The notes under the pieces were generated by a model. It worked only from the letters and a program-made list of their open reading frames with translations. It was not told where the DNA came from and searched no databases. Of a DNA stretch of 64,000 bases, positions 6,644 through 52,494 are shown piece by piece; the first letter of the stretch is position 1, and each line of letters opens with the position of its first letter. A program made the position numbers and the translations under genes. The stretch comes from Takakia lepidozioides (lineage: Eukaryota; Plantae; Bryophyta). The DNA lies in contig CM060731.1 in assembly GCA_030704615.1 (NCBI GenBank), positions 2,728,001 through 2,792,000 on the forward strand, in the 5' to 3' direction.

Positions 6644-7412
6644 TGCGACCGCCAGCAGGGGTGGTCGCATATTTTTTTCTTTTATTTATTATGTGCGACC
6701 ACCAGCAGGGGGGTGGTCGCAGAATTTTTATTTTTTTTAATAGGTGGGGGTGGTCGCAAATTTGTTTATGTTTTTTAATGGGTGCGACTTCCAGCAAGGG
6801 GGTGGTCGCAGATGTTTTTTTTTTTAAGCAGCAGGGAGGTGGTCGCATAATGTTTTTTTTAAAATAGGCGCGACCACCAGCAGAGGTGTGGTCGCAGAGA
6901 TTTTGTTTAAGGTGCGACCACCACCTGCTGGTGGTCGCACTATTTTCCTTTTCTTTAATAGATGCGACCACCAGCAGGGGGGTGGTCGTAGGGGGGTGGT
7001 CGCATAATTTTCCGATTTTTTAATATCTACCAACAGTCAGTAGCCAGGTCAGTAGCTCAGTTGGTTAAGTGCACTGAGTGCGACCCGGACGATTCTGGGG
7101 TCAAATCTTGCTACTTGATGGGTGTGGTATGGTTTGTGTGTGGTGCCCCATTCCTACGCCTCTTGGCACATAAATGAAAGAGGTTATTTTCTCCTCTCAC
7201 TACTAAGGGGCATGATTTGTGAGCTGTCGCTCCTAGGTGTTTCCCAAAATAAAATAAAATAAAATCTGCGACCACCAGCAGGGATAATCAATAAATCAGT
7301 AAATAGGTGCGACTACGGGCAGGGGGGTGGTCGCAACATTTTTCTTTTATTTTAACAGTTGCGACGACCGCTACTGGTGGTCACACAACTGTTTTTTTTT
7401 AAATAGGTGCGA
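6644..7412. repeat. Array of palindromes GCGACCACC-N7/8-GGTGGTCGC with AT-rich linkers
   Basis: Directly visible, e.g. gcgaccaccagcaggggggtggtcgc at ~6695-6720. Confidence 0.9.
7047..7264 (+). mobile_element. tRNA-derived SINE inserted in the palindrome array
   Basis: Box A-like TAGCTCAGTTGG, degenerate box B-like GGGTCAAATC, unique body, A-rich tail (AAAAT)n. Second copy at 42652-42868 (-). Confidence 0.65.
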
Positions 7413-7736
7413 CCACCAGGAGGTTCAACCTCTGTATGTATGTTTGGAGAGGCAGATGAAAAGCACATGTATCGACTCCCCATAGATTTGTGAAGGGGAA
7501 GATGAATGTTGGGAGCTGCACCTGGCTTTTGTGGCTTTCGAAACCATAAAAAGAAATCAACAATGTAAAAGTAATGACGAAACACAAACACACGCACAAC
7601 CACCAAACCCTTTATTGGGTACACATATTCCATCATTTTTATTTCCGTACACGTTGCATGTACCCAAACTGAAACATGGATATCCATGGAAACATACTAC
7701 ATATCATGTGACAGGTCACAAAAGTTATAGCTGTAC

Positions 7737-24203: not shown

Positions 24204-24486
24204 CACTGATCATGGGAACGGGGGCCTAGTTATCATTCCTGACGTGACGTGGCGCTGACACGTCGGCCGTCACGTCCGACATGCGTCACGTCACGTCGAA
24301 TCCGGACATTTACCCATGTAATTTTTTTTTTACATTTGACTTTTACGATTTACTTCTACCCTTTGTAATGACATGGCAGCCACGGTGTAAAACAGACGTG
24401 GCCAATTATTAATATTTTTTCATTCTTCTAAAAAAATGATTCAGCCTATATTCACGGTCGCATATAATTTATTATTTTTAATAAAA

Positions 24487-25010
24487 GCAACCGCCCACAT
24501 TGGCGGTCGTTTGTAATTTAATATTTTGTTAAATTAAGCGACCGCCAGTATTGGCGGTCGCCGGTAATTTATTTATTTTTAAATGAAGCGACCGCCCATA
24601 TTGGCGGTCGCCCGTAATTTATTTATTTTTAAATGAAGCGACCGCCTATATTGGCGATCGCCCGTAATTTATTTATTTTTAAATGAAGCGACCTCCAATA
24701 TTGGCGGTCGCCCGTAATTTATTTATTTTTAAATGAAGCGACCTCCAATATTGGCGGTCGCCCGTAATTTATTTATTTATAAATGAAGCGACTGCTGAAA
24801 TTGGCGGTCGCCCGTAATTTATTTATTTTTAAATAAAGCGACCGCCGAAATTGGCGGTCGCCCGTTATTTTTTTATTTTTAAATGAAGCGACCGCCCATA
24901 TTGGCGGTCGCCCGTAATTCTTTTATTTTTAAATGAAGCGACCACCCATATTGGCGGTCGTCCGTAATCTATTTATTTTTAAATGAAGCGACCGCCCATA
25001 TTGGCTAGTC
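24487..25010. repeat. ~51-bp tandem array with palindrome GCGACCGCC-N6-GGCGGTCGC, upstream of the kinase gene
   Basis: About 10 units such as aaatgaagcgaccgcccatattggcggtcgcccgtaatttatttattttt. Confidence 0.95.
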
Positions 25011-25423
25011 GCGCCGCGCTGACACGTAGCAAGGCGCCGCACCTTTTCGAGCATAATGTCATTTTTTTTGGGGGGGGGGGCTGGTGGGCGCCTATATAAA
25101 CCATTCCCCCCTCCTTTTCTGATCACTTTTGCCCCTCTTGTGGTGCGGTTCATTGGCATCCTGTAGTCCTTTCGGACTTCGTTGCTTGGCACTGCCAACG
25201 GGAGGTGCAAAGGTGATTATTTGGGGGGGGGGAGAGGTTTTGTTGGTTTTCTATTGGTCAGTCCCACACACTTGTTCACGGTACAATCATCGTATCACCA
25301 TTTTGCCGTTTCCGGATCTCCGGCAGCCTGTTTTTTTGCAGAAAACTACGAAGACACCATCCACACGCGTTCATTGCCATTTTTCTGAGGTTTTGGACCC
25401 TGTAGTGGGCAAAGGTTTATACA

Positions 25424-26886
25424 ATGTCGGGGGTTGTGAATTCAAGTTCTGGGGCGGGATCGTCTGGGGGGCGGAGGAAGAGAAAACGTGCCCACGAGCG
25501 GGATAGCCAGGTTAACAAGCCAGACTACCCGGGACCGGATGCCTTGGATAGGGTGAAAGAAGTGGTAGCGGATTATTTCAAGGGTAAGGACATAATGAGG
25601 CTGGAGAGTGCTTATGTTAGGCATGGATGGGAGGGGTTTCAGATTTTTCAGCAAAATATGGAGAGAAAAATGACAAACGCTTTGGCGGGGGCTAAGTGGA
25701 CGGCGAACAGGGGCAAGCCGAAGTTCAATCGGTGGATCCAAAGCAGGGCGAAAGACGTCACGTGGAATTTGAGGCAATTAATGCAGACATGGAAGGGTAG
25801 AACAACCCAGGGTCGAGTGTCCTCCGCCGAAGCTGAGTTGATGCGGCGTGTTGAGTATTGGGCTTGCTCGGCAAGTCAGAATTCACATCGCCGGACTAGG
25901 GTTGTCCCTTGGAGGCGGGGTCATCGGGCGGGGAAGGCACAACTGGTCTTTATTACCTGAACTCTACTGCGAAGGTGGTAGAGATTGGCCCTTACAAAGA
26001 AGGAGGGTATGCTAAGGTCCGTCACTGTAGGATTGTTGGCGATTCTAGAATATCGGAGCGTTGGGAGCTAGCGGGAAAAAAACCCAAGTCCAAAAATCCA
26101 GAAAAGGCGTTGAGACAACATAACGACGAGTGTTTGGCAGTGAAGTTCCAGCATCCGGGTGTTATCTCGTATTTTGCTGTGAATGCACGTGAGGTAAAGG
26201 GTTACACTCGCTGGTGGAATGGGGGGACAATACGCGACATGATGAACCTTGACAGAAAATGGGGCAACAATTCGGACAACAGGGTGATTTTGGAACAAAT
26301 GGGAACAGAAGCAGAGTTCCAGGAATGCAATCGCTTGCTTCGTTTCCGGAAAGTGCGCAGTAAACTTGCATGGGCACTGGTGTGCATCATGGATGTTGTC
26401 CACAAGAAAGGTGTCCTGCACAACGACTTGTCCCCCGACAACATCTTGTTGCATTTTCCAGATGGCACCGAGGAGATCAAGATTGGGGTGTGTGATTGGG
26501 GCTTAGTCACCCCATTGGGCATACGCAAAGCCTCGTTGTACCAGTTTGAAAACCAAGACAAGTTGGACCGGGAACTCGCGAAAAGATGGTGGGTGGAAAA
26601 AAATATTGCATCGGTTTTCAATACGAATGTCACGCCCCCCCCCCAACAGGACATGACGTCGGAGGCCTTTGCCGTTGGGAAGATAGCGGTATGAATAAAT
26701 GACGGCGCTCATTATGATCAAAGTATGTTCCATGACCAATCTACGGGAGGTTGTTGACATTCAATGCTACAAAGATTGTACGACAACAACAAAAATGAGA
26801 GAGTCACATTAGCCCATGTAGTACTTCGGTTCATGGGCAAGCCATTCAATTGGCCTGAGCCGAAAGACGTATATAGGACGGAGTAG
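25424..26886 (+). pseudogene. TE-borne intronless protein kinase with an NLS-like N-terminus (frameshift and premature stops)
   Basis: RRKRKR; Gly-loop EGGYAKV; LAGK lysine; HNDLSPDNILL catalytic loop; DWG. Homolog at 49700-51199. Confidence 0.85.
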
Positions 26887-27585
26887 ACCATAGTCTCGTA
26901 GATATGAGATTTCTGGCGGTACAATGGTTCTTTTATGAAGACATAACTCAATTTTGATCGTGCATGTAATAAATAAAGTCCCATTGTAAATATTACATTG
27001 CATATGCTCGACCCTGGCACCTGTCATCGCAACATAAATGGTTTGTGTACTAGCTCACTGTTTACATTTATAATGTTCCAAGGTTTCGGATAGGGTTATG
27101 AGAAAACGATGTATTAGTTCCGTAGGAGCTAGACAACAAACGTCTCATCTCATTCAACTGTGCGACACTACCATGAGAGGCATGGATCGGAAAGTAATAG
27201 GTGCACATGCGACCTCCGAACGTTTGATACTAGGTCTCTACTTAAACGTGCGGAGGTCGTATGTACACCTATTATTTTTTTATCCATGCCACTCATGGTA
27301 GTATCGCCCAGTTGAATGTGATATGGAACGTTTGTTGTCTAACTCATATGGATCCAATATATCATTTTCTCAGTACCCTGTCAGAAACATTGAAACATTC
27401 GCAGTTACAAACAGTGCCACAATACACGGCCGGTTTTGTTGAAATGACATTTGTGAGGTTCGAGCGTATGCAATTTATTATTTACAACGGAATTTTATTT
27501 ACTCGGGGGACCGGTACTGCTGTTGAAGCGCAACTGATGGTGCGAATTCTCTATTGATTGGAGCTGTCACAACCAATGTCAACAA

Positions 27586-27932
27586 TCATATTTACGGTAA
27601 GGTGTTTCATGCTATTGTTGTTCATCTAGCTGAATTTTGTAGTACTCTTTTTGTTATTCCCATGCCAACGTCCTCTGAGACTGTCATGTTCAAACGGATG
27701 TATCAGCCACCCCGGCCAGCTTGCAAGCTACAGCCATGGCCCACCATAAATTGAATGAATTGAAGATTTTGTGCGAAGTTCCTGGTTTCATGTCCGTGGT
27801 GGCTGATACGGAATTCGGAATATGGCAGTCGCAGTGGACCTGATGTTGTTGGCATAGGAGTAGCAAAACGATTCCTAAATAATTCTGCTACATGAACATC
27901 GGCAATATGAAACACCTTGCAGTACATATGAT
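27586..27932. repeat. Imperfect inverted repeat (~85-bp arms)
   Basis: AAGGTGTTTCAT...ATGCCAAC versus GTTGGCAT...ATGAAACACCTT. Confidence 0.75.
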
Positions 27933-28242
27933 TCTTGAGATTGTTTGCACGGATTATTTGTGTTTGTGCTTTCAAGTGACGAACATTTTCGCCATGGTGC
28001 GGAAGACGTGCATTGGCCACATTAAACGGTTGATGTGATACCATTTCACAAATGTATCACATCGCATTTGTGAAAATGTATCACATGAACCGTTCCATGT
28101 GGCCTACGGGAGTCTTCGATGGGTACGAGATCAATGTGGCCTACAAGATCTACTTCCACCAACAAACATGTGATCATTTCAAAACGCTAGAACTTTGAAG
28201 CGACGATGGGCAAGGTTCTTCATCCAGATGTTCAACATGCTG

Positions 28243-28541
28243 AGGTCTTCTGTAATGTCTCTTGTTTCGTAATGAGGTGCTTCTCCAACTCTTATTTTTC
28301 CAATTCTAATATCTTCCATCTGGAACATATCCACACATGCGTATATAACTTAAGAAAAGAAATGACCATCAAAACTGGAAGCTGGGGATGAGGCTTATAA
28401 AAGCTGAGATGGTCATTTGTTTTTTTAAGGATTTATGCACACATATGTGGATCTGTTCCAGGTGGAGAATATTAACATATTGGATAAAGTGGACATGGAG
28501 AAGCACCGCATTACGAGGCAAGAGACACTACAAAAAGAGCT
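28243..28541. repeat. Imperfect inverted repeat / foldback (~130-bp arms, ~40-nt loop)
   Basis: TGTCTCTTG..CGTAATG.GGTGCTTCTCCA...AAATGACCATC versus GATGGTCATTT...TGGAGAAGCACC.CATTACG..CAAGAGACA. Confidence 0.85.
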
Positions 28542-28559
28542 TCAAAGGGCATACCATGT

Positions 28560-30970
28560 AACAGGTCCCAGTATAATCAAAGACGAAACCCCATTCATTC
28601 AATGGACGATTGAATGGTTGCCCATCCAAATGATTTTTGTTTGCTTTCAATCTTTGCCACTATGTTCAACATTCCATGTATCAGGTCCAGGACTAATATC
28701 AGATCAATCGAAATTCATTCAATGGCTCAACGGATGGTTAGCCATCAAAATGATTTTGGTTCGCTTTGAGACTTGGCCACTATGTTCAATGTGCCATGTA
28801 AGAGGCCCCAGAGTAATATGAGATCAATCAAAATTCGTTCAATGGGCCAACGGATGGTTGCCCATCCAAATGATTTTCGTTCGCTTTGAAACTCCCTCTG
28901 ATACGTCCCAGTGTAATACGAGATTAATCAAAAATCGTTCGATTGTCCAATGAGGCGTTCACTTGTCATCTAGTTTTTGTTCAATGCGAAAAAGAAATCC
29001 TGCAATGCGTGCACGGCTATTGCACCCATTGAACGGATGTGGTTGAAGCCCCTCTTTTGCCCGCATGTGCTTGAACATGTGTGGGACACATGTGCGGAGA
29101 CACAACAGATGAATAAATCATTTGCCTCCCCTTCGACGCGCTCCCCCCTCAAGCCATTCCACAATTTAATTGAATTTAAATTTATTTTAAGCCAATAAAT
29201 AGGTTTGCACTACCTTTCAGTGGGGGTTTCTGGCACGTATTGATTTTGTTTTTGGCTCAATTTTGTTCTGCGGCTTCCAACATCCCACGGCTACTCCCTT
29301 GCCAAAATTTGGACCAATAAAAAAAGCCCCCAAAAAAAAAAAATCTCTTCGCTCATTATTGCAGAACTCTCTATAAAGAATGCATGAAGTAGAACACAAA
29401 TCAAAATTGGAGTGCAAAACAGGGAAGAAACTGTGGTTTTGGGTCCAAATGAATTTTGATCGCTCCCAAATTTGGCACGCACGTTGCATATGGCTACATT
29501 ACACGTCCCATTCAAAAACAGAATGAAAAAAAAAATCGTGAGCACGCGAAACACGGTCCAACAGGTCCCAAAGCAATAGTAGCTCCAACAGAATACATTC
29601 AACGGGTGAACGGATGGTTGCCCATCCAAATCATTTTTGTTAGCTTCCAAACTTTGCCAGCACGTTTCAGACACCCTCTCACAGGTCCCGGACTAATATC
29701 AGATCAATCGAAATTCATTTGATGGCTCAATGGATGGTTGGCCATTGAAATGATTTTGGTTCGCTTTGAGACTTGGCCACTATGTTCAATGTGCCATGTA
29801 AGAGGCCCCAGAGTAATATGAGATCAATCAAAATTCGTTCAATGGGCCAACGGATGGTTGCCCATCCAAATGATTTTCGTTCGCTTTGAAACTTGGCTAG
29901 TGTGTTCAATGTACCCTCTGATACGTCCCAGTGTAATACGAGATCAATCGAAAATCGTTCGATTGTCCAATGAGGCGTTCACTTGTCATCTGGTTTTTGT
30001 TCAATGCGAAAAAAGAAATCCTGCAACGCGTGCACGGCTATTGCACCCATTGAACGGATGTGGTTGAAGCCCCTCTTTTGCCCGCATGTGCTTGAACATG
30101 TGTGGGACACATGTGCGGAGACACAACAGACGAATAAATCATTTTCCTCCCCTTCGACGCGCTCCCCCCTCAAGCCATTCCACAATTTAATTGAATTTAA
30201 ATTTATTTTAAGCCAATAAATAGGTTTGCACTACCTTTCAGTGGGGGTTTCTGGCACGTATTGATTTTGTTTTTGGCTCAATTTTGTTCTGCGGCTTCCA
30301 ACATCCCACGGCTACTCCCTTGCCAAAATTTGGACCAATAAAAAATGCCCCAAAAAAAAAAATCCTCTTCGCTCATTATTGCATAACTCTTTATAAAGAG
30401 TGCATATAGTAGATCACAAATCAAGTTTGGAGTGCAAAACAGGGAAGAAACTGTGGTTTTGGGTCCAAATGAATTTTGATTGCTCCCAAATTTGGCACGC
30501 ACGTTGCATATGGCTACATTACACGCCCCATTTAAAAACGGAATGAAAAAAAAATCGTGTGCATGCGAAACACAGTCCAACAGGTCCCAAAGCAATAGCA
30601 GCTCCAACAAAATACATTCAACGGGTGAACGGATGGTTGCCCATCCAAATCATTTTTGTTAGCTTCCAAACTTTGCCAGCACATTCCAGACACCCTCTCA
30701 CAGGTCCCGGACTAATATCTGATCAATCGAAATTCATTCGATGGCTCAACGGATGGTTGGCCATTGAAATGATTTTGGTTCGCTTTGAGACTTGGCCACT
30801 ATGTTCAATGTGCCATGTAAGAGGCCCCAGAGTAATATGAGATCAATCAAAATTCGTTCAATGGGCCAATGGATGGTTGCCCATCCAAATGATTTTTGTT
30901 CGTTTTGAAACTTGGCCAGTGTGTTCAATGTACCCTCTGATACGTCCCTGTGTAATATGAGATCAATCGA
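28560..30970 (-). repeat. 120-bp-monomer satellite with a 1020-bp higher-order unit (~2.3 copies)
   Basis: Blocks at 28921, 29941 and 30961 are in register; same family as 1-3596 in reverse complement. Confidence 0.9.
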
Positions 30971-31416
30971 AATTAGTTTGTGCTTTGAGAACTTTGTGGG
31001 TATGTTCGTAGAAAGATCATAGATTTCGCGAAATGATTATGAAATACGGAGGGACCAGACGAAATTTGTTTGGACCCGGACCGTTCGTAACTCGTTATAA
31101 CTTATTTGTTAACATCAATTTTTCTTGTTCTCCAGCTTTCGGAGTTCATTACCCATATACACGTCATGACCAAATATGACACCATTGTAAATTTGTTTAC
31201 AGGGTGAACTACTTCTTCCCCATCACACGAGTGTAAATGTGAAGAAAACGCTGCTCATGCAATTGAATTTGGAAGGTGTCGCACATGTGCATTGTGTATT
31301 AACAAAATTGGTGATATACAAACTTGGCGGAATGCCATCACTGTGTTTTCCAACAATATTCAAGATACAACAAAAATACATATTGTATATGTGTTACGCT
31401 GCCAGTCATTAAAAAC

Positions 31417-33755
31417 CTAGTTGTCATTGTCTGAAGATGTGGAATTTGATGCTGTGGCCTGATTTGCACTGCCAATTGCCAGAGCTTGTGACCGTGATCT
31501 CGTGGTCAATGAGGGGCCTAATGGCATGTGATCAATTCTGGCCTGCATCCGTCTACTTCGCGGTGAAAGTTGACTTTCTTCTTCACTCTCACGACGTGGC
31601 GGAGGTGGATCGAGAACAAGTGCTCGGGCTGCATGCAAATCGGCAACGAGGCCGTCCACATCCGGCAATACAGCCCCCGAAACACGATGATAACGGTCTG
31701 TCCATAATCGCCTCCATTTCTCTACAACTGCCTTGATGGTACTTTTGAAACTTTCCAACTGCCTCTCGCGGGCCCTGTCCCTAATCATTGTGTTGTTTCG
31801 ACGATAAGCCACCTCGTACGTATTATTCATTCGGCGTTGACATATTATAGCATCTTCCAGTTCGGACAACAACAAATGTCTCCCAATCGGTTGTCGGTCA
31901 TACAATTCGTTCTCCTCTGGCACCCATGGAACCTGTGGGATCCGGATAAACCTGGACCTTCTTTGACTCCAATGCCCTCCCAGATTGCGGCAAAACTGCT
32001 CTCTCTCCCACCAATCTCGAATGCCTCCAGCACGTATGGTTATCTCCCAATCAGATGTGACCCAGAAATATTGGGAATCTTTGATGTATACCGGGTTTCC
32101 GACATGTATGCCATGCATCTCTCTGTCTGCATCCCATACCAAGTTCTTGCCCCAATGCACACAATTCAGAAATGTGTATGGTAGCCCATCCAATGGAAGG
32201 TTGTGTCGATTGTATTCAAAACCTATAGGCATCCGATCCTCCAAGCCCACCAGCTCATAGAAACGGCGATGGATTGGTGTACGACATTCTGGGCAAACGC
32301 TCGTCCGCAAGGCTTGCGGGATAAGACATGTGAGATGGAACATATGTCCACATGATCCAAGCACATGACATCCCTCTGGGCCGTATGGATTCCTACACAT
32401 CGAACAAACTGTGCCATCTGATATCCACGACGGCAAAACGCTTCGTGGTATTTCCTCCCTCTGGGCCGGTTTGATGTGGCTGGTCATCCTTGTTGTGGTG
32501 TCCCACTCTTCCTCTATCTCCAATTCCCAGTTTATGCTTTTGTTCGACCCCGAAATTCTATGCTCACATCGATCGAACATAAAATCCACATTTGCCCAAT
32601 TGATATACCCGGCGAACACACTTGATGCGATGCGGAGATCGTTATACCTTTGCATGTTGGTATAAATGCTATCCACGCTACAGTTCGACATGCGTGCGAT
32701 ACGTCGCAAGCCTGACAGTGCCCGCTCTACCCGTGCTTCTCTGGAGGCCAAATGGGTCGCCCATTGTATCCAATTCTCCCAATCGCCATTCAATGGGACC
32801 CATGTCTAAATCTCCAGTGTTTTGGACAAGCGCCATGCAGTTGTCATGACAATGTCCCGCTCCTTTGTAACGCGGTCGACATCTAATATCGGGTTCATCT
32901 CCGATTGAATGGCGACCCTCGAGCATTCCCCGGTTTCCAGTACTGGTTCTTTTCCTTTCCTCATTCTCTCATCCGCTATTCGCTATTCCTCAACCATGGT
33001 TTCATCGGCCACAGGGTCAAGGACGTCCGTAACTTCCTGAATGATGAGGTCAATACTGCGAACGGGCATCGCAAACTCCGCGTCCAAGTCCACGACGTTT
33101 GTTCGAACCTCATTGTGGACAACAGTGCCTTCATTGTTTGGAGGCATGTCTTGCAATCTAGCTTCCAACTCGGCTATGCGCAGTGTTTGCCAGTCTAGTC
33201 GGTCCTGCAGGGTCCTGATTCGCTGGTCTCTTTCCGCTAGTTGTTCCTCTAACGTTGCAGCTGGTTGTATTCCGAACGTGTCCGGGATGTACTCCAAATC
33301 GTATAGCAACCTTGCGTTCCTCCTACCAACAGTTTGTCAATTCACTGGACGCAAGAGTATGACCTCTACGTACAACATGGCTGCCAATGTGTACGAGATT
33401 TGACCCTTTAAGAGAGGTTGACCCCACAATGTGCAATGCACCTCATTCGCCCTATGCTGGAAATGCAAGTTCGTGCAAGACCTGGACTCTGCGTAATTGT
33501 TTCGGGTTTGCACGTCATGCCTATCCAAAGGCCACAATCGATTGATGTGGTACCATTTCACGAATTTTTTGCATCTCGTCATCGGCCACCGGAACTCTTC
33601 CGGAACATCCTCCCAGCACTCTTCTGTTAGTATGCTAGGGTCACCAAATACTTCCTAATTCAAGTCTTGCCTTGACCATTTGATTTTCTTAAGGGCGGTC
33701 CATGTTCATTGGGGTCATCTCTTCCATGACGGTCATCGTCCTGGCCCTCTGCCAT
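31417..33755 (-). pseudogene. TE-borne RING-H2 protein (diverged paralog of 3689-6221)
   Basis: 458-aa open segment with CSMC...CGHMFHLTC...CPEC. Upstream fragments HINRLWP..RHD and AAMLY.E.ILLRPV match copy A. Confidence 0.85.
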
Positions 33756-34107
33756 TCTACAACAATCGGAACAACACTAAATGAGGTTTTCTAAAAACAC
33801 GTAATTCTAAACCCTTCCCCCGTTAAGTAGGTGTGAAAATAGTTCCTAAAAGCTAATTTTGTAGAATAAAATGATCTTGGAAGCCAGAAGAGGGCCTATG
33901 GGAGCATTCTGCAATGACCTCACAAAAATCGCGGCAAAAAATACCCCCCACCCAGCCAATGGCCTCCTTATCCACGTGTCATGGAATAATGAAATGCCAC
34001 GCACACAAAAGTTGTGTGGAGAGGAAATGAGGGGAGAATAAGCCTCCCTTGGCTTATATCCCCCCTACCCTCATTTCTCGGGCCACGTGCAGGGCGAATC
34101 TTCTAGA

Positions 34108-36495
34108 AGCGACCGCCAACTTGGCAGTCGCTCGATTTTCGGAAAAATTAAAAAATAGGCGACCGCGAGAACTGCCGGTCGCTCCATTTTTCGGGAAAAA
34201 AAAATAAAAAAATGACCACCAGAACAGGCGGTCGCTCCATTTTCGCATCATTTAAAAAAAATTAAAAAAAAAAAAAGCGACCGCCAACATAGGCAGTCGC
34301 TTCATTTTTAAAAACTTAAAAAAAAAAAAAAACGACCGCCAACATAGGCGGTCGCTTCATTTAAAAACAATTTAAAATAAATAAGCGACCGCTAGCATAG
34401 GCGGTCGGTTCATTTTCAAAACACTTAAAATAAATAAGCGACCGCCAACATAGGTGGTCGCTTCATTTTTAAAAAATTTAAAATAAATAAGTGACCGCCA
34501 ACAAAAGCGGTCCCTTCATTTTCAAAAACTTTAAAACAAAAAAACCGACCGACTACATGGGCGGTCGCTTCGTTAATTTTTTTTCAAAAAAAAATAAGCG
34601 ACCGTTAGCATAGGCGGTTGCTTCATTTTCAAAACATTTAAAATAAATAAGCGACCGCCAACATAGGCAGTCGCTTCATTTTCAAAAACTTTAAAAAAAA
34701 TAAGCGACCGCCAACATAGGCGGTCGCTTCATTTTGAAAAAAAAATAAAAAAAATAAGCGACCGCCAGCATTGGCGGTCGGTTCATTTTCAAAACATTTA
34801 AAATAAATAAACGACTGCCAATATAGGTGGTCGATTCAATTAAAAAAAAATTAAAATAAATAAGCGACCGCCAGCATGGGCGGTCGCTTCATTTTCAAAA
34901 CATTTAAAATAAACAAGCGACCGCCAACATAGGCGGCGCTTCATTTTCAAAACATTTAAAATAAATAAGCGACCGCCAACATAGGCGGTCGCTTCATTTT
35001 CAAAAAATTTAAAATAAATAAGCGACCGCCAACATAGGCGGTCGCTTCATTTTCAAAAGCTTTAAAAAAAAAAAAGCGACCGCCAACATACGCAGTCGCT
35101 TCATTTTGAAAAACTTTAAAAAAAGTAAGCGACCGCCAATATAGGCGGTCGCCTCATTTTTAAAAACATTAAAAAAAAATAAGCGACCGCCAGCAATGGC
35201 GGTCGCCCCGACCGCCAACATAGGCGTTCGCTGCATTTAAAAACAATTTAAAATAAATAAGCGACCGCCAGCATGGGCGGTCGCTTTATTTTCAAAATAT
35301 TTAAAATAAATAAGCGACTGCCAACATAGGCGGTCACTTCATTAATTTTTATAAAAAAAAAATAAGCGACCGCCAACATAGGCGGTCGCTTCATTAATTA
35401 AAATAATAATAAAATAAGCGACCACTAGCATTGGCGGTCGCTTCATTTTCAGAACATTTAAAATAAATAAGCGACCGCCAACATAGGCGGTGGCTTCATT
35501 TTAAAACAAAAAAACCGCCAACATAGGCGGTCGCTTCATTTTCAAAAACTTTAAAAAAAGTAAGCGACCGCCAACATAGGCGGTCGCTTCATTTAAAAAC
35601 ATTTAAAATAAATAAGCGACCGCCAGCATAGGCGGTCGCTTCATTTTCAAAACATTTAAAGTAAATAAACGACCGCCAACATAGGCGGTCGCTTCATTTT
35701 CAAAAACTTTAAAATAAATAAGCGACCGCCAACATAGGTGGTTGCTTCATTTCCAAAATAATTAAAATAAAAGCGACTGCCAGTAATGGCGGTCGCTTCA
35801 TTTCCAAAATAATTAAAATAAAAGCGACCGCTAGTAATGGCGATCGCCCCATTTCCAAAAATAAAAAAATAAAAGCAACCGCCAGTAATGGCAGTCGCTG
35901 CATCTTAAAAAATAACCATTACAGCAACCGCCAGAAATGGCGGTCGCTGCATTTTGTAAAAACAAAAACTGCCAGTAATGGAAGTGAGGGGAGGATGACT
36001 GGGGGCTTATATGGCCCCCCCGCCTCATTCATCGCTCCACGTGCAGGGTAGACCTCGTAGAAACGACCGCCACCATGGCGGTCGCTCCATTTCTCCAAAA
36101 AAAAAAAAAAAAACGACCGCCTGTAATGGCGGTCGCTGCATTTATAAAAACAAAAAAGAATTTCAAGCGAAGTGAGGGGAGAATGTCCCGGAGCTTATAT
36201 GCCCCCCTTCCCCCCGCCTCACTCCTCACTCCATGCGCAGGGCACACTTCGTAGAAGCGACCGCCACCTTGGCGGTCGCTCCATTTTCATTTTCAAAATA
36301 ATTAAAATATAAGCGACCGCCATAAATGGCGGTCGCTCCATTTTGATCCAAAAAAACAAAAAAACGACCGCCAGTAACGGCGGTCGCTTCATTTCCAAAA
36401 TAATGACTGGGAGCTTATATGCTCCCCCCCCCTCATTCCTCGCTCCACGCAGAGGGCAGACCTCGTAGAAGCGACCGCCACCTTGGCGGTCGCTC
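34108..36495. repeat. Long (~2.4 kb) array of GCGACCGCC-N6-GGCGGTCGC palindromes with A-tract linkers, upstream of the RING gene
   Basis: Roughly 40 units such as taagcgaccgccaacataggcggtcgcttcattttc. Confidence 0.95.
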
Positions 36496-36767
36496 CATTT
36501 AAATAAAAATGAATGCACAGTTGGAAGCATGACACAATTGTTCTCTATTCCACAAGCAAATAACCGAACACAAACATGAGCAAGTGACGGGGCATTTGGC
36601 CGACATTTTGGCTGGTATACACATGGGCAACATCTTTTATTTTCCAACACATACACAACAGCAATACAAATACTCATAGTGACAATGATCACATTGGTAT
36701 TACTTCAGTACAGAAATATAAACATGTCCACTAAAAAGTGCTGATGCATGCCTACAGCTGTTTTGTT

Positions 36768-39756
36768 TCAATTCCTTCTACTCCTCCGACGGCGGGACGA
36801 AAAAGATCCTAATCCTAATGCTCCGATGGGTTGAAAATCCGGGTCACCCTCGACTTCACTACCGTTGTCATGATCAGTGCTGGAATCGTCCTCCCTATCC
36901 GACCTCATATGTCCAGGCCTTTGAATCTGCAAGCGACCTCGAACCACATTTAGTTCTCTCTGAGGTCGACTCCCGCTCCGGTCTTCAATACCATCCACGG
37001 TATTTGGCCTGTTTGTGGGCCGATCGCCTACAAAAGGTTGGACTGTTCTCTGTTGTTTATGGACTTGGGACGCAATCGAAGGTGGTCTCGAAGGAGGTAC
37101 CGGAGGGGGGACTGCTTGAGATGGATCGACATTAGATGGTCCGGCATGTGAGGAACCACGGGTCTGCTGCGCAACACGTCGGTTAAGGTGGAATTGTAGT
37201 GGCAGGTTGTCATCATCCGAGGCTTTAACTTCCGCCCGGTCTAATGTATCAGAATGATGCATGCGTGTGGAAAACAGATCAACCCTGTTGCTCTTTAATG
37301 CCCGCTGTGTTGATGGGGAGCTGGATCGGTTTTGGCATTGTGGTGGAGCTGGTCGTATCGGTGAGGCATGATCCCGTCCCGTCGACTGTACAATGGGTTT
37401 GACACCATCGTTTGTATGAACAAGGTTGCGTACGTCGATCGGTCCTGCCAGTACATCACCCCTAAGCTCCATTGGGGCTACTACTGGTTTCAGCATGTAG
37501 TGCGGGGCGAGGGTCGACCCCAACTTCATTTTGAGGACCATGTTCTGGGGATGACACAATTGCAACTTCACCTTCATCTGCGATACGCATTTTTTCAAGA
37601 AGATCATCAAAGGTCGGCTGGATATAAGCATCCTTCTCTGTGAATGTAAACCTGTCATACGCATTTTCATGAGCATCATCGGATCCATCTTCACTATCGG
37701 AGGCAGATGATTCCCTCTGAGATGATTATCTCTAAGGCTCAGTATCGTCACTCATCAAATCAGCCTCAGAAGCAGAGTCTTCGGAATGCAAATTCCTCTC
37801 ATACCATGCTGCAGCATCATCCGCTGCCCTCTCACGTAGCAGTCGACAATTGGTATACACATACACCAATTTGTCAGCCTTCGCGGGATTCAACCTGTTG
37901 CGAATCTTGTTGTGAACAAATGAATAACTGCTTCAATTGCGTTCGCAAGATGAGGCAGAGTACACTTGAGCAAGAATACGCTTCGCAATGGGAGCCAATG
38001 TTCTTGCTCCAACTCCAATTAGATCCCACCATTCATGTGGCAGCATATTGAGCTCTTTTGAATCCGGCATGTCCTCAAAAAGGTCGCGGCGATCTGAGAA
38101 GCATTGGTTTTCGGATATAGCTCTCTCTGCATGGTTCGGCGGAGCCAGTCGCATGAGCACTCGCATGAGGCCGGCCTTGGCATCAGCGTCGTCTCGGAGC
38201 ATGGTATTGTCAAGCAAGAATGGATTGAGCAAAGCTCGCACATAATACAAGTCCGTTCGAACCATCGAACGACGGTCGTAAAATGCATCCTCAGCACTGT
38301 CCGCAAGTTCAGGTTCCAAGAAGAAGGGAGGATGCCTCAAGGATTGGACGTGTTTCTCAAGATTTTGCATTAGTAACCATGCCTTGCCCATTACTGGTTG
38401 CTTTTCATCAAACTCCCGCAAGACGATTGACACCGGCTCAACCATATAAACAAAGTTTTCACATTTCTTCCAGAAATCATCGCTGCAAATGTTATTTCGA
38501 ACTTTTCGACTTTTGCCCAATGACTTGGCTTTTCTGGAGTCCCGCAATGTCCGTGTGTACGCATCCCATTGAGGATCGATGCTGGTGTGCTCCAGACTAC
38601 TCTTCACCGTCACGAACTAATCCACCATCAAGAAGTTAGTGACAAAACGAGTTTCGCCTGGATTGCGGAGGTTGTATTTGGGTTCGTGCCTCCTATATAT
38701 TGCTAAATGGATGTGGTGTGTGCGGATGAACGACACAACAGTCTTCGCTCGCTTGACAAGTTGTTTCACCCACCGTTCTTTTCCCCAATCTTCCAAAATG
38801 AGGTAAAGGATATGAGCAGCACAACCTTGATAGTACATATGGGGATAATGTGCCAACAACATGTCTGCAGTGTTTCTCATGTTAGCGGCATTGTCTGTGT
38901 ATATTTGCACGATTCTATCACTTCCGACCTGTTTGATGAAGTTCGTCAATAGTTGGCATTGATAAGGTCCATCTTTCTTCTCGCCGCTAGTGTCGACCGA
39001 TCCCGAGAATTGTTCCCCAGCTAGACATACGAGCATGACATTGAACAACGGTCTGTTTGTGACAGAACTCCATCCATCGGTACATATAGTGTTTCCATAT
39101 TTTCTGATGCACTCGCCCGTCCTATCGTTGACCTTTTGGGTAAACTCGGTCATGGCGTCTTCTAGCAATCATGTACGGAGATTGTGATAAGTCGGAGGCA
39201 CGTACGTGGATCTGGACTCCGAGGTTGCTCTAACGGCAGAAACAAATGCCGGAAGCCTTGCCACAGTAAATGGTATGTTGGCCTCAAAGAAAAACTGCGT
39301 CTATTTTTTATCCAACTGTCTTTTCGCAGACAAGTTAAGACCTTCTTGCATGGATTGCTGCCGTAATCCTCTACTCCGTTGAAGTGTAGGGGTACAAAGA
39401 GGTGTTGAAGCAAGTGTTGCTCCGGCACAATCCACTTGTCCAATGACACCCGTAGCCTCACAAGAGTCGCCCTGGGTGCTAATCAGGGCATCCTGACGGG
39501 AAGATGGAGTGTTCTGCTCAGAGGTCATGTCCAGATCCAAAGACATTGGAATATTGCCTCCACACTGGGTAAAGTGGTTTTTTACCCGCATAGATGCTTT
39601 GGGGCATAAACCCACCCCAACGCTCTTCACACCTTTATAGCCGAGGTGAGCGAGCAACCGATCCTTACGATAAGAAAGTTTTAATGCACATAGGTTGCAC
39701 TCAACACTACTAGTGTTCGGGATTGCCGAATACCAAGGGCTCCATTCCTCCCTCAT
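36768..39756 (-). pseudogene. hAT transposase (BED finger, DDE core, hATC dimerisation domain, long low-complexity C-terminus) with in-frame stops
   Basis: W..ECNLC...LLAHL...C BED finger; TDGWS; TDNAANM; CAAH; ETRF; WW...ILAQVYSASSCERN. Confidence 0.93.
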
Positions 39757-40189
39757 CTTCACCCAATATCCACTCCCCTGGGACCTAGCGATGCAAGCAA
39801 CAAAAAACAATCACCTATAAATGAACGTGTTGTGAATGTAGAGTGCAATGCGATAGCCCAACACTTCTACACCTGTCAGCAACCCAAGTGGGTCGATGTG
39901 GGTTGTAGTGTTGAGCTTATACACAATTTGCTGAAGTGGCTTTGGTGGAAGCCACAACGGCAAAATGTCCGTACCTTCCTCTTGGGCTACACTCTCGTTC
40001 AATGGAAGAGAACATCCAAAACAACCTCAAGTGTTTGCGCCAAAAGAAGTGAGGAGCTTGGTGACCCTCCTCCGTTATATATGATCTAAGAGGGATGAAA
40101 GTGAAATAAAAGTGAAATGAATAAATGACGAACCAATAGCGCCTACCCGAAAAAGGCTGTACAACCATATTTGTTGTAATTTTGAAATT

Positions 40190-41500
40190 AAGCGACCGCT
40201 AATACTACGGTCGCTATTTTTTTTTTTAATGAAAAACAAGCGACCGCCACTACTGTGGTCGCTTTTATTTCCTTTCATTTTGTGCAATATTGCGGTCACT
40301 TCTATTTTGTATATTTTTAAATTTAAGCGACCGCCGGTATGGCGGTCGGTTCATTTGTTAATATATTTAAAATAAAGCGACCGCCAATATGGTGGTCGCT
40401 TTTATTTTTAATATTTAAAAAGAAACGCAATCGCCAGTAAGGCGGTCGCTTTTAATCTTTATATTTTGGTGGTCGTTTGTTTTTCTATACATTTTTTAAA
40501 TTAAGCGACCGCCCATTGGCGGTCGCTGTTTTTTTTATACATTTTTGAAATTATCCGACCGCCATATGGCGGTCGCTTGTTCTGTACATATTTACAAAAT
40601 TATGCGACCGCCAATACGGCAGTCGCTTGTTTTCTTTTTTAAATTAGGCGACCGCCAATGCGACCGCCAATCTTATTTTTTCTTAAAAATAAATTGAAGC
40701 AACCGCCTAGATAGCGGTCGCTATTTCTTTTTTTAATTCAAAAAATAAAGCGATCGCCACTGCGACCGCCAATCTTGCTTTAAAAATAAATAAATTGAAG
40801 CGACCGCCAATATGGCGGTCGCTATTTCTTTTTCTATTTCGAAAAACAAAGCGACCGCCAGTGCGACCGCCAATACGGCGGTCGTTATTTCTTTTTTAAT
40901 TTCGAAAAACAAAGCGACCGCCATAATTGGCGGTCACGTTCATTTTGTTAATTTTCAAAAATATATTTGCCACCGTGCGACCACCAATACGGCAGTCGCT
41001 TGTTTTCTTTTTTAAATTAGGCGACTGCCAGTGCGACCGCCAATCTTGCTCTGAAAAAACAAATTGAAGCGACCGCCAATACGGCGGTCGCTTTTTTTTT
41101 ATAAAAATTCGTAAAACAAAACGACCGCCATAATTGGCGGTCGCGTTCATTTTGTTAATTTTCAAAAATGTATTTGCCACCGTGCGACCGCCAATACGAC
41201 AGTCGCTTGTTTTCTTTTTTAAATTAGGCGACCGCCAATACGCCCGCCAATCTTGTTTTTTTTTTTAAAAATAAATTTAACCGACCGCCAACATAGCGGT
41301 CGCTATTTGTTTTTTTAATTCGAAAAATAAGGCGACTGCCAGTGCGACCGCCTATCTTGCTTTTAAAAAAAAAAAATTTGAAGCGACCGCCAGTGCGACT
41401 GCCAATTTTGCTTTTAAAAAAATAAAAATTTAAGCGACCGCCAATACGGCGGTCGCTATTTCTTTTTTAATTTCGAAAAACAAAGCGAACAGGCGGTCGT
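40190..41500. repeat. GCGACCGCC palindrome array upstream of the transposase
   Basis: Many full and half sites separated by A/T tracts. Confidence 0.9.
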
Positions 41501-42089
41501 GTTCATTTTGTTAATTTTCAAAATGTATTTGCCACCGCCACCATGTCGGCGACGTGGCTGCTTAAGTGGTAGTATTTTACCTGGTACTATTTTTACCAGA
41601 ATATTCCCCGAACCTGACGTGACGGAGGTCTCGTCAGCGTCAGGTCTGATGTGACCTGACGCTGACGGACGGACGTGACGCTGATAACCAGGAACGGGGG
41701 TGAAGTGAGTGGGGACGAAGATTTTGTACCAGGCGTGAGATCATACCATCGTCGTCGTGCCAGACGAAACTAGGTACAGCTATAACTTCTGTCACATGAT
41801 GTGTAGTATGTTTCCATGGATATCCATGTTTCAGTTTGGGTACATCCATACGTGTACGAAAATAAAAATGGTGGAATATGTGTACCCAAGAAAAGGTGTG
41901 GTGGTTGTGCGTGTGTTTGTGTTTCGTCATTACCTTTACATTGTTGATTTCCTATTATGGTTTCGAAAGCCACAAAGGCCAGGTGCAGCTCCCAACATTC
42001 ATCCCTTCACAAATCCATGGGGAGTCGATACATATGCTTTTCATCTGCCTCTCCAAACATACATACAGGTGCAAGAGAACCAACCTCCT

Positions 42090-43190
42090 GGTGGTCGCAC
42101 CTATTTTAAAAATAATAATTGTGCGACCACCAGTAGCGGTCGTCGCAATTGTTAAAATAAAAGAAAAATGTTGTGACCACCCCCCTGCTGGTAGTCGCAC
42201 CTATTTACTGATTTAATAGGTAGTAAGTTAGTACGTAGTAAGGGGGGGTTTCCCTTATATAGCCTCTCATTGCGGTGGGACCCTTCTAGAAGCCCGCCGA
42301 CCCTGGGAGCCTTCTAGAAGGCCCTGGACACATGTCAACCCTACAAGACTCCATATTCTAAATTTAGCCAATTCCTCCATTCTTTTTTTGGACCCCCTCA
42401 TCTCATTCCTTAATACACGTGGCCTTCCTACATAGGCACCCCACTCTAATTCCTGGACCACTCTAGAATCAGGGCCCGAATGAAACTGCTCTACATATTA
42501 TTCGCACCTATTTAACAAAAAGAAAAATAGTCCGACCACCCCCCTGCTGGTGGTCGCAGCTATTTAAAAATAGAAAATTCTGCGACCACCCCCTTGCTGG
42601 TGGTCGCCCCTAAAAAAAAATGGTGCGACCACCCCCCTGCTAATGGTCGCAGTTTTTTTTTTTTTTTTTGGGAAACATCTGGGAGCGACAGCTCACAAAT
42701 CAGGCCCCTTAGTAGTGAGAGGAGAAAATAACCTCTTTCATTTATGCGCCATGAGGCTTAGGAATGGGGCAGCACACACGAACCATACCACACCCATCAA
42801 GTAGCAAGATTTGACCCCAGAATTGTCCGGGTCGCACTCAGTGCACTTAACCAACTGAGCTACTGACTGTTGGTAGATATTAAAAATTCGGAAAATTATA
42901 TGACCACCCCCCTACGACCACCCCCCTGCTGGTGGTCGCACCTATTTGTTTTAAACAAAATTTCTGTGACCACCCCCCTGCTGGTGGGCGCGCCTATTAA
43001 AAAAAAGAAAAATTATGCGACCACCTCCCTGCTGGTGGTCGCACCTATTAAAAATAAATAAAAATCTACGACCACCCCCTTCTGGTGGTCACACCCATTG
43101 AAAAAAATTTGCGACCACCCCCCTGCTGGTGGTCGCACCTAATAAAGAAAAGAAAAAATGATGCGACCACCCCCTGCTGGCGGTCGCAAC
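42090..43190. repeat. GCGACCACC-N7/8-GGTGGTCGC palindrome array upstream of the copy B RING gene
   Basis: e.g. gcgaccacccccttgctggtggtcgc at ~42582-42607. Confidence 0.9.
42652..42868 (-). mobile_element. tRNA-derived SINE (equivalent position to 7047-7264)
   Basis: Reverse complement of the copy A SINE, with a poly(T) run at 42653-42669. Confidence 0.65.
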
Positions 43191-43656
43191 TAGCTTGCAT
43201 AGGGCGCAGCAAGGAAATTGAATTACTAGCGTGCGCAGTTTGATGGCAGCACGCCCCGAGTGTGGAGGGGGGGCTTATAAGGCCTTGGAGGCCATTCTCT
43301 CCCTCACTTTTCTCTACACCAGGACTTGGTGGGCGATGGGATGTTGCATTCCTTATTCTTGAGTCCAAGTGGAGAGGGGTGCTATTGGTTGGCTGGGGGG
43401 TATTTTGGGCCGTTGGTTTCTACGAAATCGATGCTGAGTACCTCCCGGGAAGCCCTCCTCTGGCACCCACGTTTTTTTCATTGCACATTGCGTCATATCA
43501 CTTAGAACTGCGGAGGGAGTGACACGTGCCTCTAGTACTTGGGGAGGATTCATTAGGGAGTAGGATTAGGGAGTAGGATTAGGTACGATTTAGGAGGGTT
43601 GGGAGAGCATTTTTCTTAGCAAACACCTGTCGAGTAGGGGTAAGCCAAAGCCATAA

Positions 43657-51199: not shown

Positions 51200-51563
51200 G
51201 ATGAAAGTACTATGCGGAATAGACGCGGCAACAGAAAAATAAACCCAGACTATTGATAACCTTATATACTAGCAGACTAATTTCCTCACCTTCTATTGGT
51301 ATAGTACCCAAAGCAAACTCTCCCGCAGTCCCAGGAAAAAAAAGCAAAAACTCCTCTCCCACACAAATCCACTTTCTCCCCCCCCCCCCCAACACTCAGT
51401 CCTAGCCACTGAAGTTCAAACTCTAAGAAGCCCCATAACCGCACTCACAGAGAGGGAAAAAAGTGGGTTGGGAATGAGGGGTAGGTCCTTATATACTGCC
51501 TGGAGAAGCCTGGCGCGCGACCGCCTCTGCTGCCCATTCACGCCTCGCCACGTGTCCAGGGAG

Positions 51564-52048
51564 CGGTCGCACCTATGGGTGATCGCAGCTAATAACAAAA
51601 CAAAAAAAGTGCTGCGACCCCCCCTGCTGGTGGTCGCACATTTTTTAAAACAAAACGAAAATGTGCGACCCCCCATAAGCGGTCGCACCTAATAACAAAA
51701 AAGAAAAAGTCTGCGACCACCACCGGTTGGTGGTCGCACCCATTTAAGAAATAATTAAAAATGTGCGACCATCCCCTGTTGGTGGTCGCACCTATTTAAA
51801 AAAAATGAAAAAGTTGCGACCACCACCTGCTGGTGGTCGCACCCAATTTTAAAAAAAGAAAAAATGTGCGACCACCCTCTGCTTGTGGTCGCACCTATTA
51901 AAAAGAAAGAAAATGCTGCGACCACCACCTGCTCGTGGTCGCACCCATTTAAAAAATAAGAAAAAATGTGCGACCACCCCCTTCTGGTGGTCACACCTAT
52001 TTTAAAAATAAATAAAAATTGTCCGACCACCCTTTGCTGACGGTCGCA
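51564..52048. repeat. GCGACCACC palindrome array upstream of the copy B kinase
   Basis: About 9 units, ~50-bp period. Confidence 0.9.
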
Positions 52049-52494
52049 TGATTGACAATATAAATCATAATATATGAATTTTACAGATAATTAATGAAGT
52101 CCACGTAATGATGCCACATCGGTTGCCACGTCGGTTTTCATAGTAAATAGTCAATAGTAAAGTAAAAAAATAAACATATTTATGTACAGTAACGTCGGTT
52201 TAGGACGTGACGTGACGCACGTCTGTCGCTGACGTCGGACGTGACGCTGACGCGTCAACGCCACGTCATGTCCAAATTTGCAACTAGGCCCAACATTCGC
52301 CATGAGGTGAATGCATTGAGAATGCTCTCTGGAAATAGAGGCTACATTGACAACATTTTGGAATTAAAAGGAATGAGCAAGTATCTTTGGCCGAGACTTG
52401 GAGGAAGTCGGCCGAACTAGCTAGTGAAGAGTAGAGTCAAGTGGGGGTTTGATTCTTGCCATGAGACGCCATGGTACTGAAACAAACTCCTTGA

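What the first reader, a model, noticed from the sequence alone, without database searches (positions are those of the whole stretch)
34108..36495. Subfamily-specific palindrome arrays upstream of every TE gene: candidate self-recognition or anti-silencing code
Seen: the arrays at 24487, 34108 and 40190 all use GCGACCGCC-N6-GGCGGTCGC. The sister subfamily arrays (6644, 42090, 51564) all use GCGACCACC-N7/8-GGTGGTCGC. Both arms changed in a compensatory way, the spacing changed, and the switch is concerted across separate arrays of one element. Each array lies 5' of a gene, including internal ones far from the TIRs. The period is ~50 bp with A/T-tract linkers. Known: Arabidopsis VANDAL Mutator elements use VANC proteins that bind family-specific tandem motifs to cause sequence-specific demethylation. 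Inference: an analogous system with a dimeric TE-encoded binder (the RING protein N-terminus or the BED transposase).
Basis: partly seen in the sequence, partly recalled or inferred. Interest (0 to 1): 0.85.

Follow-up and report, generated by a model that had tools for sequence, protein, structure and literature searches.

The report
Palindrome-array promoters of a three-gene hAT transposon
A large plant jumping gene of the hAT class has a row of short palindromes in front of each of its three genes; the palindrome half-site is conserved across distant relatives, so it is probably a protein landing site, but the binder and any anti-silencing role are untested.

Summary
Element B is a hAT transposon at 24225-41692, with an 8-bp target duplication and an empty site in copy A. 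It carries three tandem arrays with 50-53 bp units and about 70 palindromes of GCGACCGCC / GGCGGTCGC. Copies A and C belong to a second lineage whose arrays all use GCGACCACC / GGTGGTCGC with longer spacers. No site of either lineage carries the other lineage's variant on both arms.

Each array ends 55-110 bp upstream of a conserved TATA core promoter, one each for the kinase, RING and transposase genes. A different motif (TGACG/GACGTG) marks only the termini.

Three points weaken the "subfamily code" reading:
- The two lineages are only about 50% identical in protein, so they are not close sisters.
- Both arm changes are CpG-to-TpG/CpA transitions, and whole-unit array turnover can spread them.
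- A distant relative (L008) clusters a half-site that is 8/9 identical upstream of its genes and near its terminus, so the motif evolves slowly.

Best reading: selected protein-binding arrays that act as shared upstream control regions. The binder is unknown; candidates are the transposase N-terminus, the RING protein N-terminus or a host factor. VANC-like anti-silencing remains possible but has no evidence here. Other windows of this scan noted the same family before.

The parts
24225..41692 (.). Element B: 17,468-bp hAT transposon. TIR CCTAGTTATCA / CCTGGTTATCA, 10 of 11 bases matching.
   Evidence: 8-bp TSD AACGGGGG at 24217-24224 and 41693-41700. Copy A shows the unoccupied site with a single AACGGGGG at about 7810-7820.
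24225..24320 (.). Left terminal motif cluster (TGACG / GACGTGAC). Likely transposase-binding end, distinct from the palindromes.
   Evidence: These motifs cluster only at the three termini in the window. About the outer 90 bp aligns well with the terminus of lineage C.
24444..25010 (.). B_left array: 11 palindromes, N6, exact 50-bp period.
25093..25100 (+). TATA box of the kinase promoter, preceded by a G-run.
   Evidence: same architecture as the modules aligned
25424..26694 (+). Protein kinase gene (two ORFs, N-terminal RRKRKR).
   Evidence: Pfam Pkinase E=4.5e-8; ORFs
31417..33755 (-). RING-H2 gene: exon 1 (Cys/His N-terminal domain, broken in B), a coiled-coil exon, and the RING ORF 31417-32793.
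   Evidence: Pfam RING; coiled-coil hints; exon 1 aligned with A, C and L008; sequence
34053..34060 (-). TATA box of the RING promoter, 50-55 bp from the first palindrome, with CACGTG between them.
34109..36493 (.). B_int array (the finding): 41 palindromes with a 53-bp unit. It lies between the transposase 3' end and the RING promoter.
35965..36505 (-). Three extra copies of the module palindrome-CACGTG-TATAAG at the distal end of B_int.
   Evidence: alignment
36768..39810 (-). hAT transposase gene in several ORFs. In-frame stop at 38617-38619, so this copy is dead.
   Evidence: DUF659 E=2e-31; ORFs; stop; homologues in L002 and L008
40074..40083 (-). TATA box of the transposase promoter, followed by CTCCTCACTTC.
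40192..41500 (.). B_right array: 18 palindromes (mostly N5) plus six direct half-site pairs, with a higher-order repeat of about 207 bp.
41600..41692 (.). Right terminal TGACG/GACGTG motif cluster of B.
6645..7420 (.). A_int array (A/T variant), upstream of the RING gene of copy A. TATA at 6579-6586 on the minus strand.
5799..6221 (-). Intact RING-gene exon 1 of copy A: 140 aa, PPKKKPKG, invariant C62 H70 H80 C94 H98 H101.
42090..43186 (.). C_int array (A/T variant, N8), followed by TATA at 43274-43281 and the RING gene on the + strand.
51562..52048 (.). C_right array (A/T variant, N7), upstream of the kinase gene on the - strand. TATA at 51488-51497.
52185..52290 (.). Right terminus of copy C, with a TGACG/GACGTG cluster homologous to the left end of B.

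Best explanation
The arrays are amplified clusters of a binding site for a sequence-specific protein, with half-site GCG(A/T)CC(G/A)CC. In this lineage the half-sites are arranged as inverted pairs inside AT-rich tandem units of about 50 bp. One array sits directly upstream of the TATA core promoter of each of the three genes (kinase, RING-H2, transposase), and two of the three are also subterminal. The arrays therefore most likely act as a shared upstream control region that puts all three genes under one factor. That factor is probably made by the element itself: the transposase N-terminal Cys/His finger, or the RING protein's N-terminal Cys/His domain next to its coiled coil. The same sites may also help bring the element ends together. 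The G-to-A / C-to-T difference between lineages arose as two symmetric CpG transitions and was spread by array turnover. It may shift binding preference but does not make a sharply private code. Shown: the anatomy, the conservation of the arms, the promoter linkage and the clade-wide half-site. Inferred: that a protein binds, which protein, and the effect on transcription.
For: The palindromes occur only in the hAT arrays, at 28 exact matches against 0 expected by chance. Arms are 18/18 identical among arrays of one element and 16/18 between lineages, while linkers between lineages score no better than shuffled AT-rich sequence, with one exception (B_left versus C_right). The lineages share only 47-61% protein identity. 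Every array is followed within 55-110 bp by a conserved module of G-run, TATAAG and CTCCCCTCAC. The internal array holds the same position, between the transposase 3' end and the RING promoter, in B, A and C. A separate motif class marks only the termini. This is reminiscent of the bipartite recognition reported for Ac transposase (PMC3260210 and Becker and Kunze 1997, cited there). Relative L008 (RING x2 plus hAT transposase, 35-48% identical) clusters GCGTCCGCC, which is 8/9 identical to the B half-site, with 38 hits against 6 expected. These clusters lie upstream of a RING gene, upstream of the transposase and in its subterminal 300 bp, each followed by a TATA and CCCCTCACTTC where a gene follows. 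Direct half-site pairs in B_right show that the half-site itself, not only the hairpin-forming pair, is the repeated unit.
Against: No DNA-binding fold could be assigned to either candidate protein. Relatives L002 and L003 carry RING plus transposase without any such motif or array, so arrays are not obligatory in the clade. Spacer length varies by 2 bp within one element, which is awkward for a rigid dimer. The three promoters are paralogous cassettes, so an array in front of every gene may partly reflect common descent. Only two lineages plus one outgroup were available.
Confidence: 0.5

Rival explanations
1. First reader's model. The arrays are a subfamily-specific self-recognition code read by an element-encoded protein that removes or blocks silencing, working like VANC on VANDAL elements or like TnpA on Spm.
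For: Motif clusters lie in non-coding regions upstream of each gene, form tandem repeats, and are consistent within a lineage while differing between lineages. This matches the published VANC and TnpA pattern (PMC5735166; bioRxiv 10.64898/2026.08.24.746577). Element B keeps CpG o/e at 1.05, against 0.42-0.44 in neighbouring repeats.
Against: The motif differs by a single base per arm between lineages that are about 50% diverged in protein, and by one base from the L008 motif. It is therefore conserved rather than rapidly diversifying. No VANC or TnpA homologue turned up among the ORFs scanned against Pfam. There are no methylation data. The high CpG o/e of B may only mean that the insertion is young, since B is nested inside C.
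Confidence: 0.13
2. The palindromes are binding sites for a conserved host transcription factor that the element has recruited as enhancers. No element-encoded binder is involved.
For: The half-site is conserved across very divergent elements, and apparently across different hosts. Position just upstream of TATA boxes is typical of enhancer or UAS elements.
Against: The same motif is also subterminal at both ends in B and in L008, which is where hAT transposases bind. No site occurs outside the hAT copies in this window, although the window holds hardly any host genes, so this is a weak test.
Confidence: 0.15
3. The arrays work through nucleic-acid structure, not protein recognition. Candidates are cruciforms or hairpins in DNA, or hairpin RNA from read-through or from the duplicated distal promoters, acting as a terminator or insulator between tandem genes or as a small-RNA source.
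For: Each unit folds into an 11-bp stem, with z about -10 for DNA and -9 for RNA. Both arms changed together and loop length is free to vary. Three promoter copies at 35965-36505 point into the array.
Against: Any palindrome folds like this. Direct half-site pairs, and the non-palindromic clusters in L008, keep the half-site without a stem. Stem sequence would then be free to drift, yet 16 of 18 arm bases are conserved between lineages.
Confidence: 0.1
4. The arrays are neutral minisatellites: a promoter-proximal unit expanded by slippage or unequal exchange and has no function of its own.
For: Tandem arrays expand readily. The A/C arrays look like recent whole-unit copies, with 93% linker identity. 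L002 and L003 do without arrays.
Against: Arms are conserved while linkers and spacers have diverged within B and between lineages. Array position is conserved in lineages about 50% diverged in protein. A homologous half-site is clustered in L008.
Confidence: 0.1

Closest known systems
Ac/Ds subterminal AAACGG repeats bound cooperatively by Ac transposase (hAT superfamily)
   Same: Same superfamily. Many copies of a short motif lie in the subterminal regions of both ends. A second, different recognition element sits at the very termini, matching the bipartite recognition described for Ac (PMC3260210).
   Different: Here the sites are inverted pairs embedded in regular 50-53 bp tandem units. 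The arrays extend 0.6-2.4 kb rather than about 200 bp. A full array lies 5-7 kb from the nearest end. Each array is tied to a TATA promoter of a separate gene. Binding is untested.
VANC proteins and their tandem target motifs in Arabidopsis VANDAL (Mutator-like) elements
   Same: [quoted passage not shown] Motif variants differ between related families (PMC5735166).
   Different: Different superfamily, and no VANC-like protein turned up. VANC motifs are arrayed in one orientation, not as palindromes. Here the motif changes very slowly across lineages. A demethylating activity is unknown.
Spm/CACTA TnpA and its clustered subterminal motifs
   Same: An element-encoded regulator binds dense motif clusters at the element's promoters and termini and activates cognate copies, with family-specific motifs (bioRxiv 10.64898/2026.08.24.746577). 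From my own knowledge, maize TnpA sites occur in both direct and inverted orientation, as in B_right.
   Different: No TnpA homologue, a different superfamily, and internal arrays for extra cargo genes.
Related RING-carrying hAT element in L008 (ENA ERZ25073694, ctg132236)
   Same: RING-H2 gene or genes plus a DUF659 hAT transposase. The half-site is 8/9 identical and is clustered upstream of genes and subterminally. It has the same TATA plus CCCCTCACTTC core promoter, and an AT-rich tandem array next to one terminus.
   Different: Its motifs are mostly direct, about 19-22 bp apart, and are not in 50-bp palindrome units. Its 62-bp array has a different core. No kinase homologue was detected.

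Membership tests
hAT superfamily transposon | 8-bp target site duplication and short terminal inverted repeats | tested here: met
   TSD AACGGGGG on both sides of 24225-41692. TIR matches at 10 of 11 bases. The empty site is present in copy A.
hAT superfamily transposon | Transposase with a hAT catalytic core and C-terminal dimerisation domain | tested here: inconclusive
   DUF659 (found in plant hAT transposases) scores E=2e-31. The B ORF 37933-38613 gets no Pfam hit of its own, but its homologues in L002 and L008 carry PF05699 Dimer_Tnp_hAT. The B copy has an in-frame stop.
hAT superfamily transposon | N-terminal BED-type zinc finger | tested here: inconclusive
   No Pfam hit in B even at E<=5. 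The homologous L008 stretch hits zf-BED at E=0.007, below the gathering score. The AlphaFold model reached only pLDDT 55.
VANC-type sequence-specific anti-silencing system | Element encodes a VANC-family protein | tested here: not met
   Pfam scans of the scanned ORFs of the hAT copies gave only kinase, RING and DUF659. No VANC-like gene turned up, but I ran no dedicated VANC search, so this rests on the Pfam scans.
VANC-type sequence-specific anti-silencing system | Dense family-specific motif repeats in the non-coding regions of the element | tested here: met
VANC-type sequence-specific anti-silencing system | The protein binds the motif and causes loss of DNA methylation at cognate copies | not testable with these tools
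   Needs EMSA or ChIP and bisulfite data.
Transposase-binding subterminal repeats (Ac type) | Repeated motif within about 250 bp of both ends | tested here: inconclusive
   The TGACG/GACGTG motifs fill the outer 100 bp or so. The palindrome arrays begin about 190-240 bp from the ends and run far inward, and one array is wholly internal.
Transposase-binding subterminal repeats (Ac type) | Bound by the element's transposase and required for transposition | not testable with these tools
   This needs an experiment.

The most novel reading that the evidence does not exclude
The palindromes are landing sites for the element's own RING-H2 protein. This protein has a nuclear-localisation-like stretch, a conserved Cys/His N-terminal domain, a coiled coil for dimerisation, a RING-H2 domain and a conserved C-terminal domain. 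On this reading it is a sequence-specific ubiquitin ligase that, together with the co-carried nuclear kinase, modifies chromatin or silencing factors at the element's own three promoters. That would be a self-contained, transposon-encoded anti-silencing module of a kind not described for any transposon.
Probability: 0.1. Interest if true: 0.85.

Novelty: new variant of a known kind. Interest (0 to 1): 0.5.

Why it matters
If a protein of the element binds these arrays, this hAT family would be a clear case outside seed plants of a transposon wiring several cargo genes to one private cis-regulatory element. So far this idea is documented only for Mutator-like (VANC) and CACTA (TnpA) elements of Arabidopsis and maize. 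The three natural half-site variants (GCGTCCGCC, GCGACCGCC, GCGACCACC) and their different arrangements give ready-made material for binding-specificity tests. The pairing of a RING ligase and a kinase with the arrays suggests a mechanism worth testing. If a host factor binds instead, the arrays show how a transposon builds strong promoters by amplifying one host site.

Tried and rejected
1. RING ORF search in the 5.8-billion-protein set: no hit in the allowed length range.
2. HMMER search of the 327-aa transposase C-terminal ORF: one short metagenome fragment only.
3. Kinase ORF search: only short contigs.
L072, L102 and L119 were inspected.
6. AlphaFold of the RING N-terminal exon (pLDDT 42) and of the transposase N-terminus (pLDDT 55): too poor for fold search.
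7. The protein atlas and PDB profile searches gave nothing.
8. Helical phasing: spacings of 50-53 bp are about five turns, but the mean phase differs between arrays, so this is not a discriminating test.
9. Composite-element idea (the internal array as a relic end of a fused element): rejected. There is no terminal motif cluster next to it, and the same layout is present in the second lineage.
10. Spliced gene models were not joined.
11. The search of earlier findings by sequence was blank.

Full report
**What is there.** The stretch 34109-36493 is a tandem array of about 41 units of 53 bp. Each unit holds the palindrome GCGACCGCC-N6-GGCGGTCGC and an A/T-tract linker. Exact searches give 21 matches for the G/C form and 7 for the A/T form GCGACCACC-N-GGTGGTCGC, against none in shuffled sequence, and all fall in six arrays. 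A relaxed catalogue lists 98 sites. Outside the arrays the window has only scattered single half-sites with a mismatch.

**The elements.** A self-comparison and the ends resolve the window.
- Element B is 24225-41692, 17,468 bp. It has an 8-bp duplication AACGGGGG and TIRs CCTAGTTATCA/CCTGGTTATCA.
- Copy A shows the unoccupied target with a single AACGGGGG, so B is a discrete hAT insertion.
- B landed in the 3' part of the transposase gene of another copy, C. C comprises 41701-52290 plus 14815-15246.
- A Ty3/gypsy element (15247-24203) landed in C about 20 bp away.
- Copy A (1 to about 8135, inverted) is 94.5% identical to C over 2.8 kb.
- B differs from A/C at 47-61% protein identity in the kinase, RING and transposase C-terminal ORFs. 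The window therefore holds two deep lineages, not close sister subfamilies.

**Gene content of B**.
- A kinase gene at 25424-26694 on the + strand.
- A 120-bp satellite.
- A RING-H2 gene at 31417-33755 on the - strand.
- A DUF659 hAT transposase at 36768-39810 on the - strand.

B is dead. The transposase has an in-frame stop at 38617-38619, and RING exon 1 is broken.

**Link to promoters.** Each array ends 55-110 bp upstream of a TATA box.

| Gene | TATA position | Strand |
|---|---|---|
| B kinase | 25093-25100 | + |
| B RING | 34053-34060 | - |
| B transposase | 40074-40083 | - |
| A RING | 6579-6586 | - |
| C RING | 43274-43281 | + |
| C kinase | 51488-51497 | - |

An alignment of seven such regions shows a conserved module of G-run, TATAAG and CTCCCCTCAC downstream of the last palindrome. 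Three further copies of this module lie at the distal end of the internal array (35965-36505). In both lineages the internal array lies between the transposase 3' end and the RING promoter.

**Two classes of cis element.** TGACG/GACGTG motifs cluster only in the outer 100 bp or so of the three termini present. The left end of B and the right end of C align well over about 90 bp, although the rest of the non-coding DNA does not align. The palindrome arrays begin about 190-240 bp inside the ends. This recalls the bipartite recognition reported for Ac transposase, which recognises subterminal AAACGG repeats plus the TIRs (PMC3260210).

**Evidence for constraint on the arms.** I compared consensus units.
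- Arms are 18/18 identical among the three arrays of B, although spacers differ (CATATT, AACATA, AATAT).
- Linkers are only partly related: B_left versus B_int is 76% (shuffle p about 0.01), while B_right is indistinguishable from shuffled sequence.
- Between lineages the arms are 16/18 identical, and linkers are mostly no better than shuffled.
- In A/C the two arrays have 93% identical linkers, so they are recent whole-unit copies of each other.

**The switch.**
- The two differences, CCGCC to CCACC and GGCGG to GGTGG, are both CpG transitions on symmetric CpGs.
- Single-arm versions occur sporadically in B: 4 sites with G,T and 3 with A,C.
- The orthologous promoter-proximal unit of A (6645) and C (43163) is a hybrid that keeps the CpG on one arm. 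This fits an older edge unit that homogenisation did not reach.
- The outgroup motif in L008 also has the CpG (below), so the A/T form is the derived one.
- Given two hits among the four CpGs of a palindrome, one in three pairs is symmetric. The 'compensatory' pattern is therefore not improbable by itself. What needs explaining is its fixation in every unit of at least two arrays.

**A relative.** Protein searches with the DUF659 exon found L008 (ENA ERZ25073694) and L002/L003 (JGI metagenomes), which carry RING homologues next to the transposase.
- L008 clusters CGTCCGCC, with extended form GCGTCCGCC, which is 8/9 identical to the B half-site. There are 38 hits with up to 1 mismatch against 6 expected.
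- The clusters lie at 2929-3163 upstream of a RING gene, at 9655-9774 upstream of the transposase, and at 19072-19300 in the subterminal region.
- Where a gene follows, a TATA and CCCCTCACTTC come next.
- A 62-bp AT-rich array with another core lies between the terminus and the inward-pointing ORFs.
- L002 has neither motif nor arrays.

The half-site is therefore an old cis element of part of this clade. It changes by single bases, and the palindromic 50-bp array is one lineage's arrangement of it.

**Who binds.** This remains unresolved.
- The transposase N-terminus has a conserved W-Y...C-x2-C...H-L-G-Y...C pattern. It gets no Pfam BED hit in B, and only a sub-threshold one in L008.
- The RING gene has a conserved N-terminal exon, intact in A at 5799-6221. 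It has a basic stretch and six invariant Cys/His residues and is followed by a coiled-coil exon. That layout would suit a dimeric binder.
- Both AlphaFold models were of low confidence, and the profile and atlas searches were blank.
- The variable spacers and the six direct half-site pairs in B_right argue for flexible or independent half-site recognition, and against a purely structural (hairpin) role. Each unit can nevertheless fold into an 11-bp stem.

**Comparison with known systems.** The layout parallels VANC targets in VANDAL elements (tandem, family-specific motifs in non-coding regions; PMC5735166). It also parallels TnpA motif clusters in Spm elements (bioRxiv 10.64898/2026.08.24.746577) and, within hAT, the Ac subterminal repeats. 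It differs from all three in four ways:
- the sites are palindromic;
- the arrays are very regular and long;
- each array is attached to the promoter of one of three genes, two of them cargo genes;
- the motif evolves slowly.

I found no paper describing a hAT family with kinase and RING cargo or such arrays, but those searches were narrow.

**Limits.** There is no genome-wide census. Only two lineages and one informative outgroup were available. Exons were not joined into spliced models and were searched separately by reference. Earlier notes of this scan describe the same three-gene hAT family with palindrome-array promoters in other windows of this genome, so the family is not new to the scan. 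What this report adds is the lineage comparison, the CpG route for the switch, the separate terminal motif and the conserved half-site in L008.

**Verdict.** The arrays are most likely selected protein-binding upstream regions shared by the element's three promoters (confidence 0.5). A VANC-like private anti-silencing code is possible but unsupported (0.13).

Noticed in passing
window 15247-24203: A Ty3/gypsy-like retroelement inserted into copy C about 20 bp from the B insertion. It has a weak gag hit and carries an ORF with a C5 cytosine DNA methyltransferase domain (21146-22345, PF00145 E=6.6e-13) and a PHD finger ORF (23030-23755). CpG o/e is 0.44.
   Followed up: partly
window 848-3591, 28593-30974, 46064-48812: A 120-bp satellite array occupies the same place in all three hAT copies, between the 3' ends of the kinase and RING genes. 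The satellites are 75-94% alike between copies.
   Followed up: no
window 7040-7230: A roughly 190-bp insertion in copy A that is absent from copy C. It has a tRNA-like stretch, but ARAGORN calls no tRNA. It may be a SINE-like element.
   Followed up: partly
window 42216-42501: A roughly 286-bp segment in copy C, absent from copy A, splits the array. It holds a TATA-like sequence and repeated TTCTAGAAG motifs, and may be a small nested insertion.
   Followed up: no
window 36768-37751 (-): A 327-aa low-complexity ORF follows the hAT dimerisation region. Its C-terminal third is conserved in A, C and one metagenome fragment (L001) at 47-61% identity. It could be a transposase C-terminal extension or a fourth small gene; this is unresolved.
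   Followed up: partly
L008 17840-18810: The 62-bp array of the related element is split by a roughly 970-bp insertion bounded by inverted TTAACCCCTCAA / TTGAGGGGTTAA ends (MITE-like).
   Followed up: no
L072 945-1102: A GC-rich (68%) bacterial metagenome contig has four identical copies of GCGACCGCC-ATCCG-GGCGGTCGC at 45-bp spacing. I take this as a chance resemblance to the plant palindrome; it may be a bacterial repeat element.
   Followed up: no
window 24225-24320 vs 52185-52290: About the terminal 90 bp are well conserved between the two lineages even though their proteins are only about 50% identical. The two lineages might therefore be cross-mobilised by each other's transposase.
   Followed up: partly
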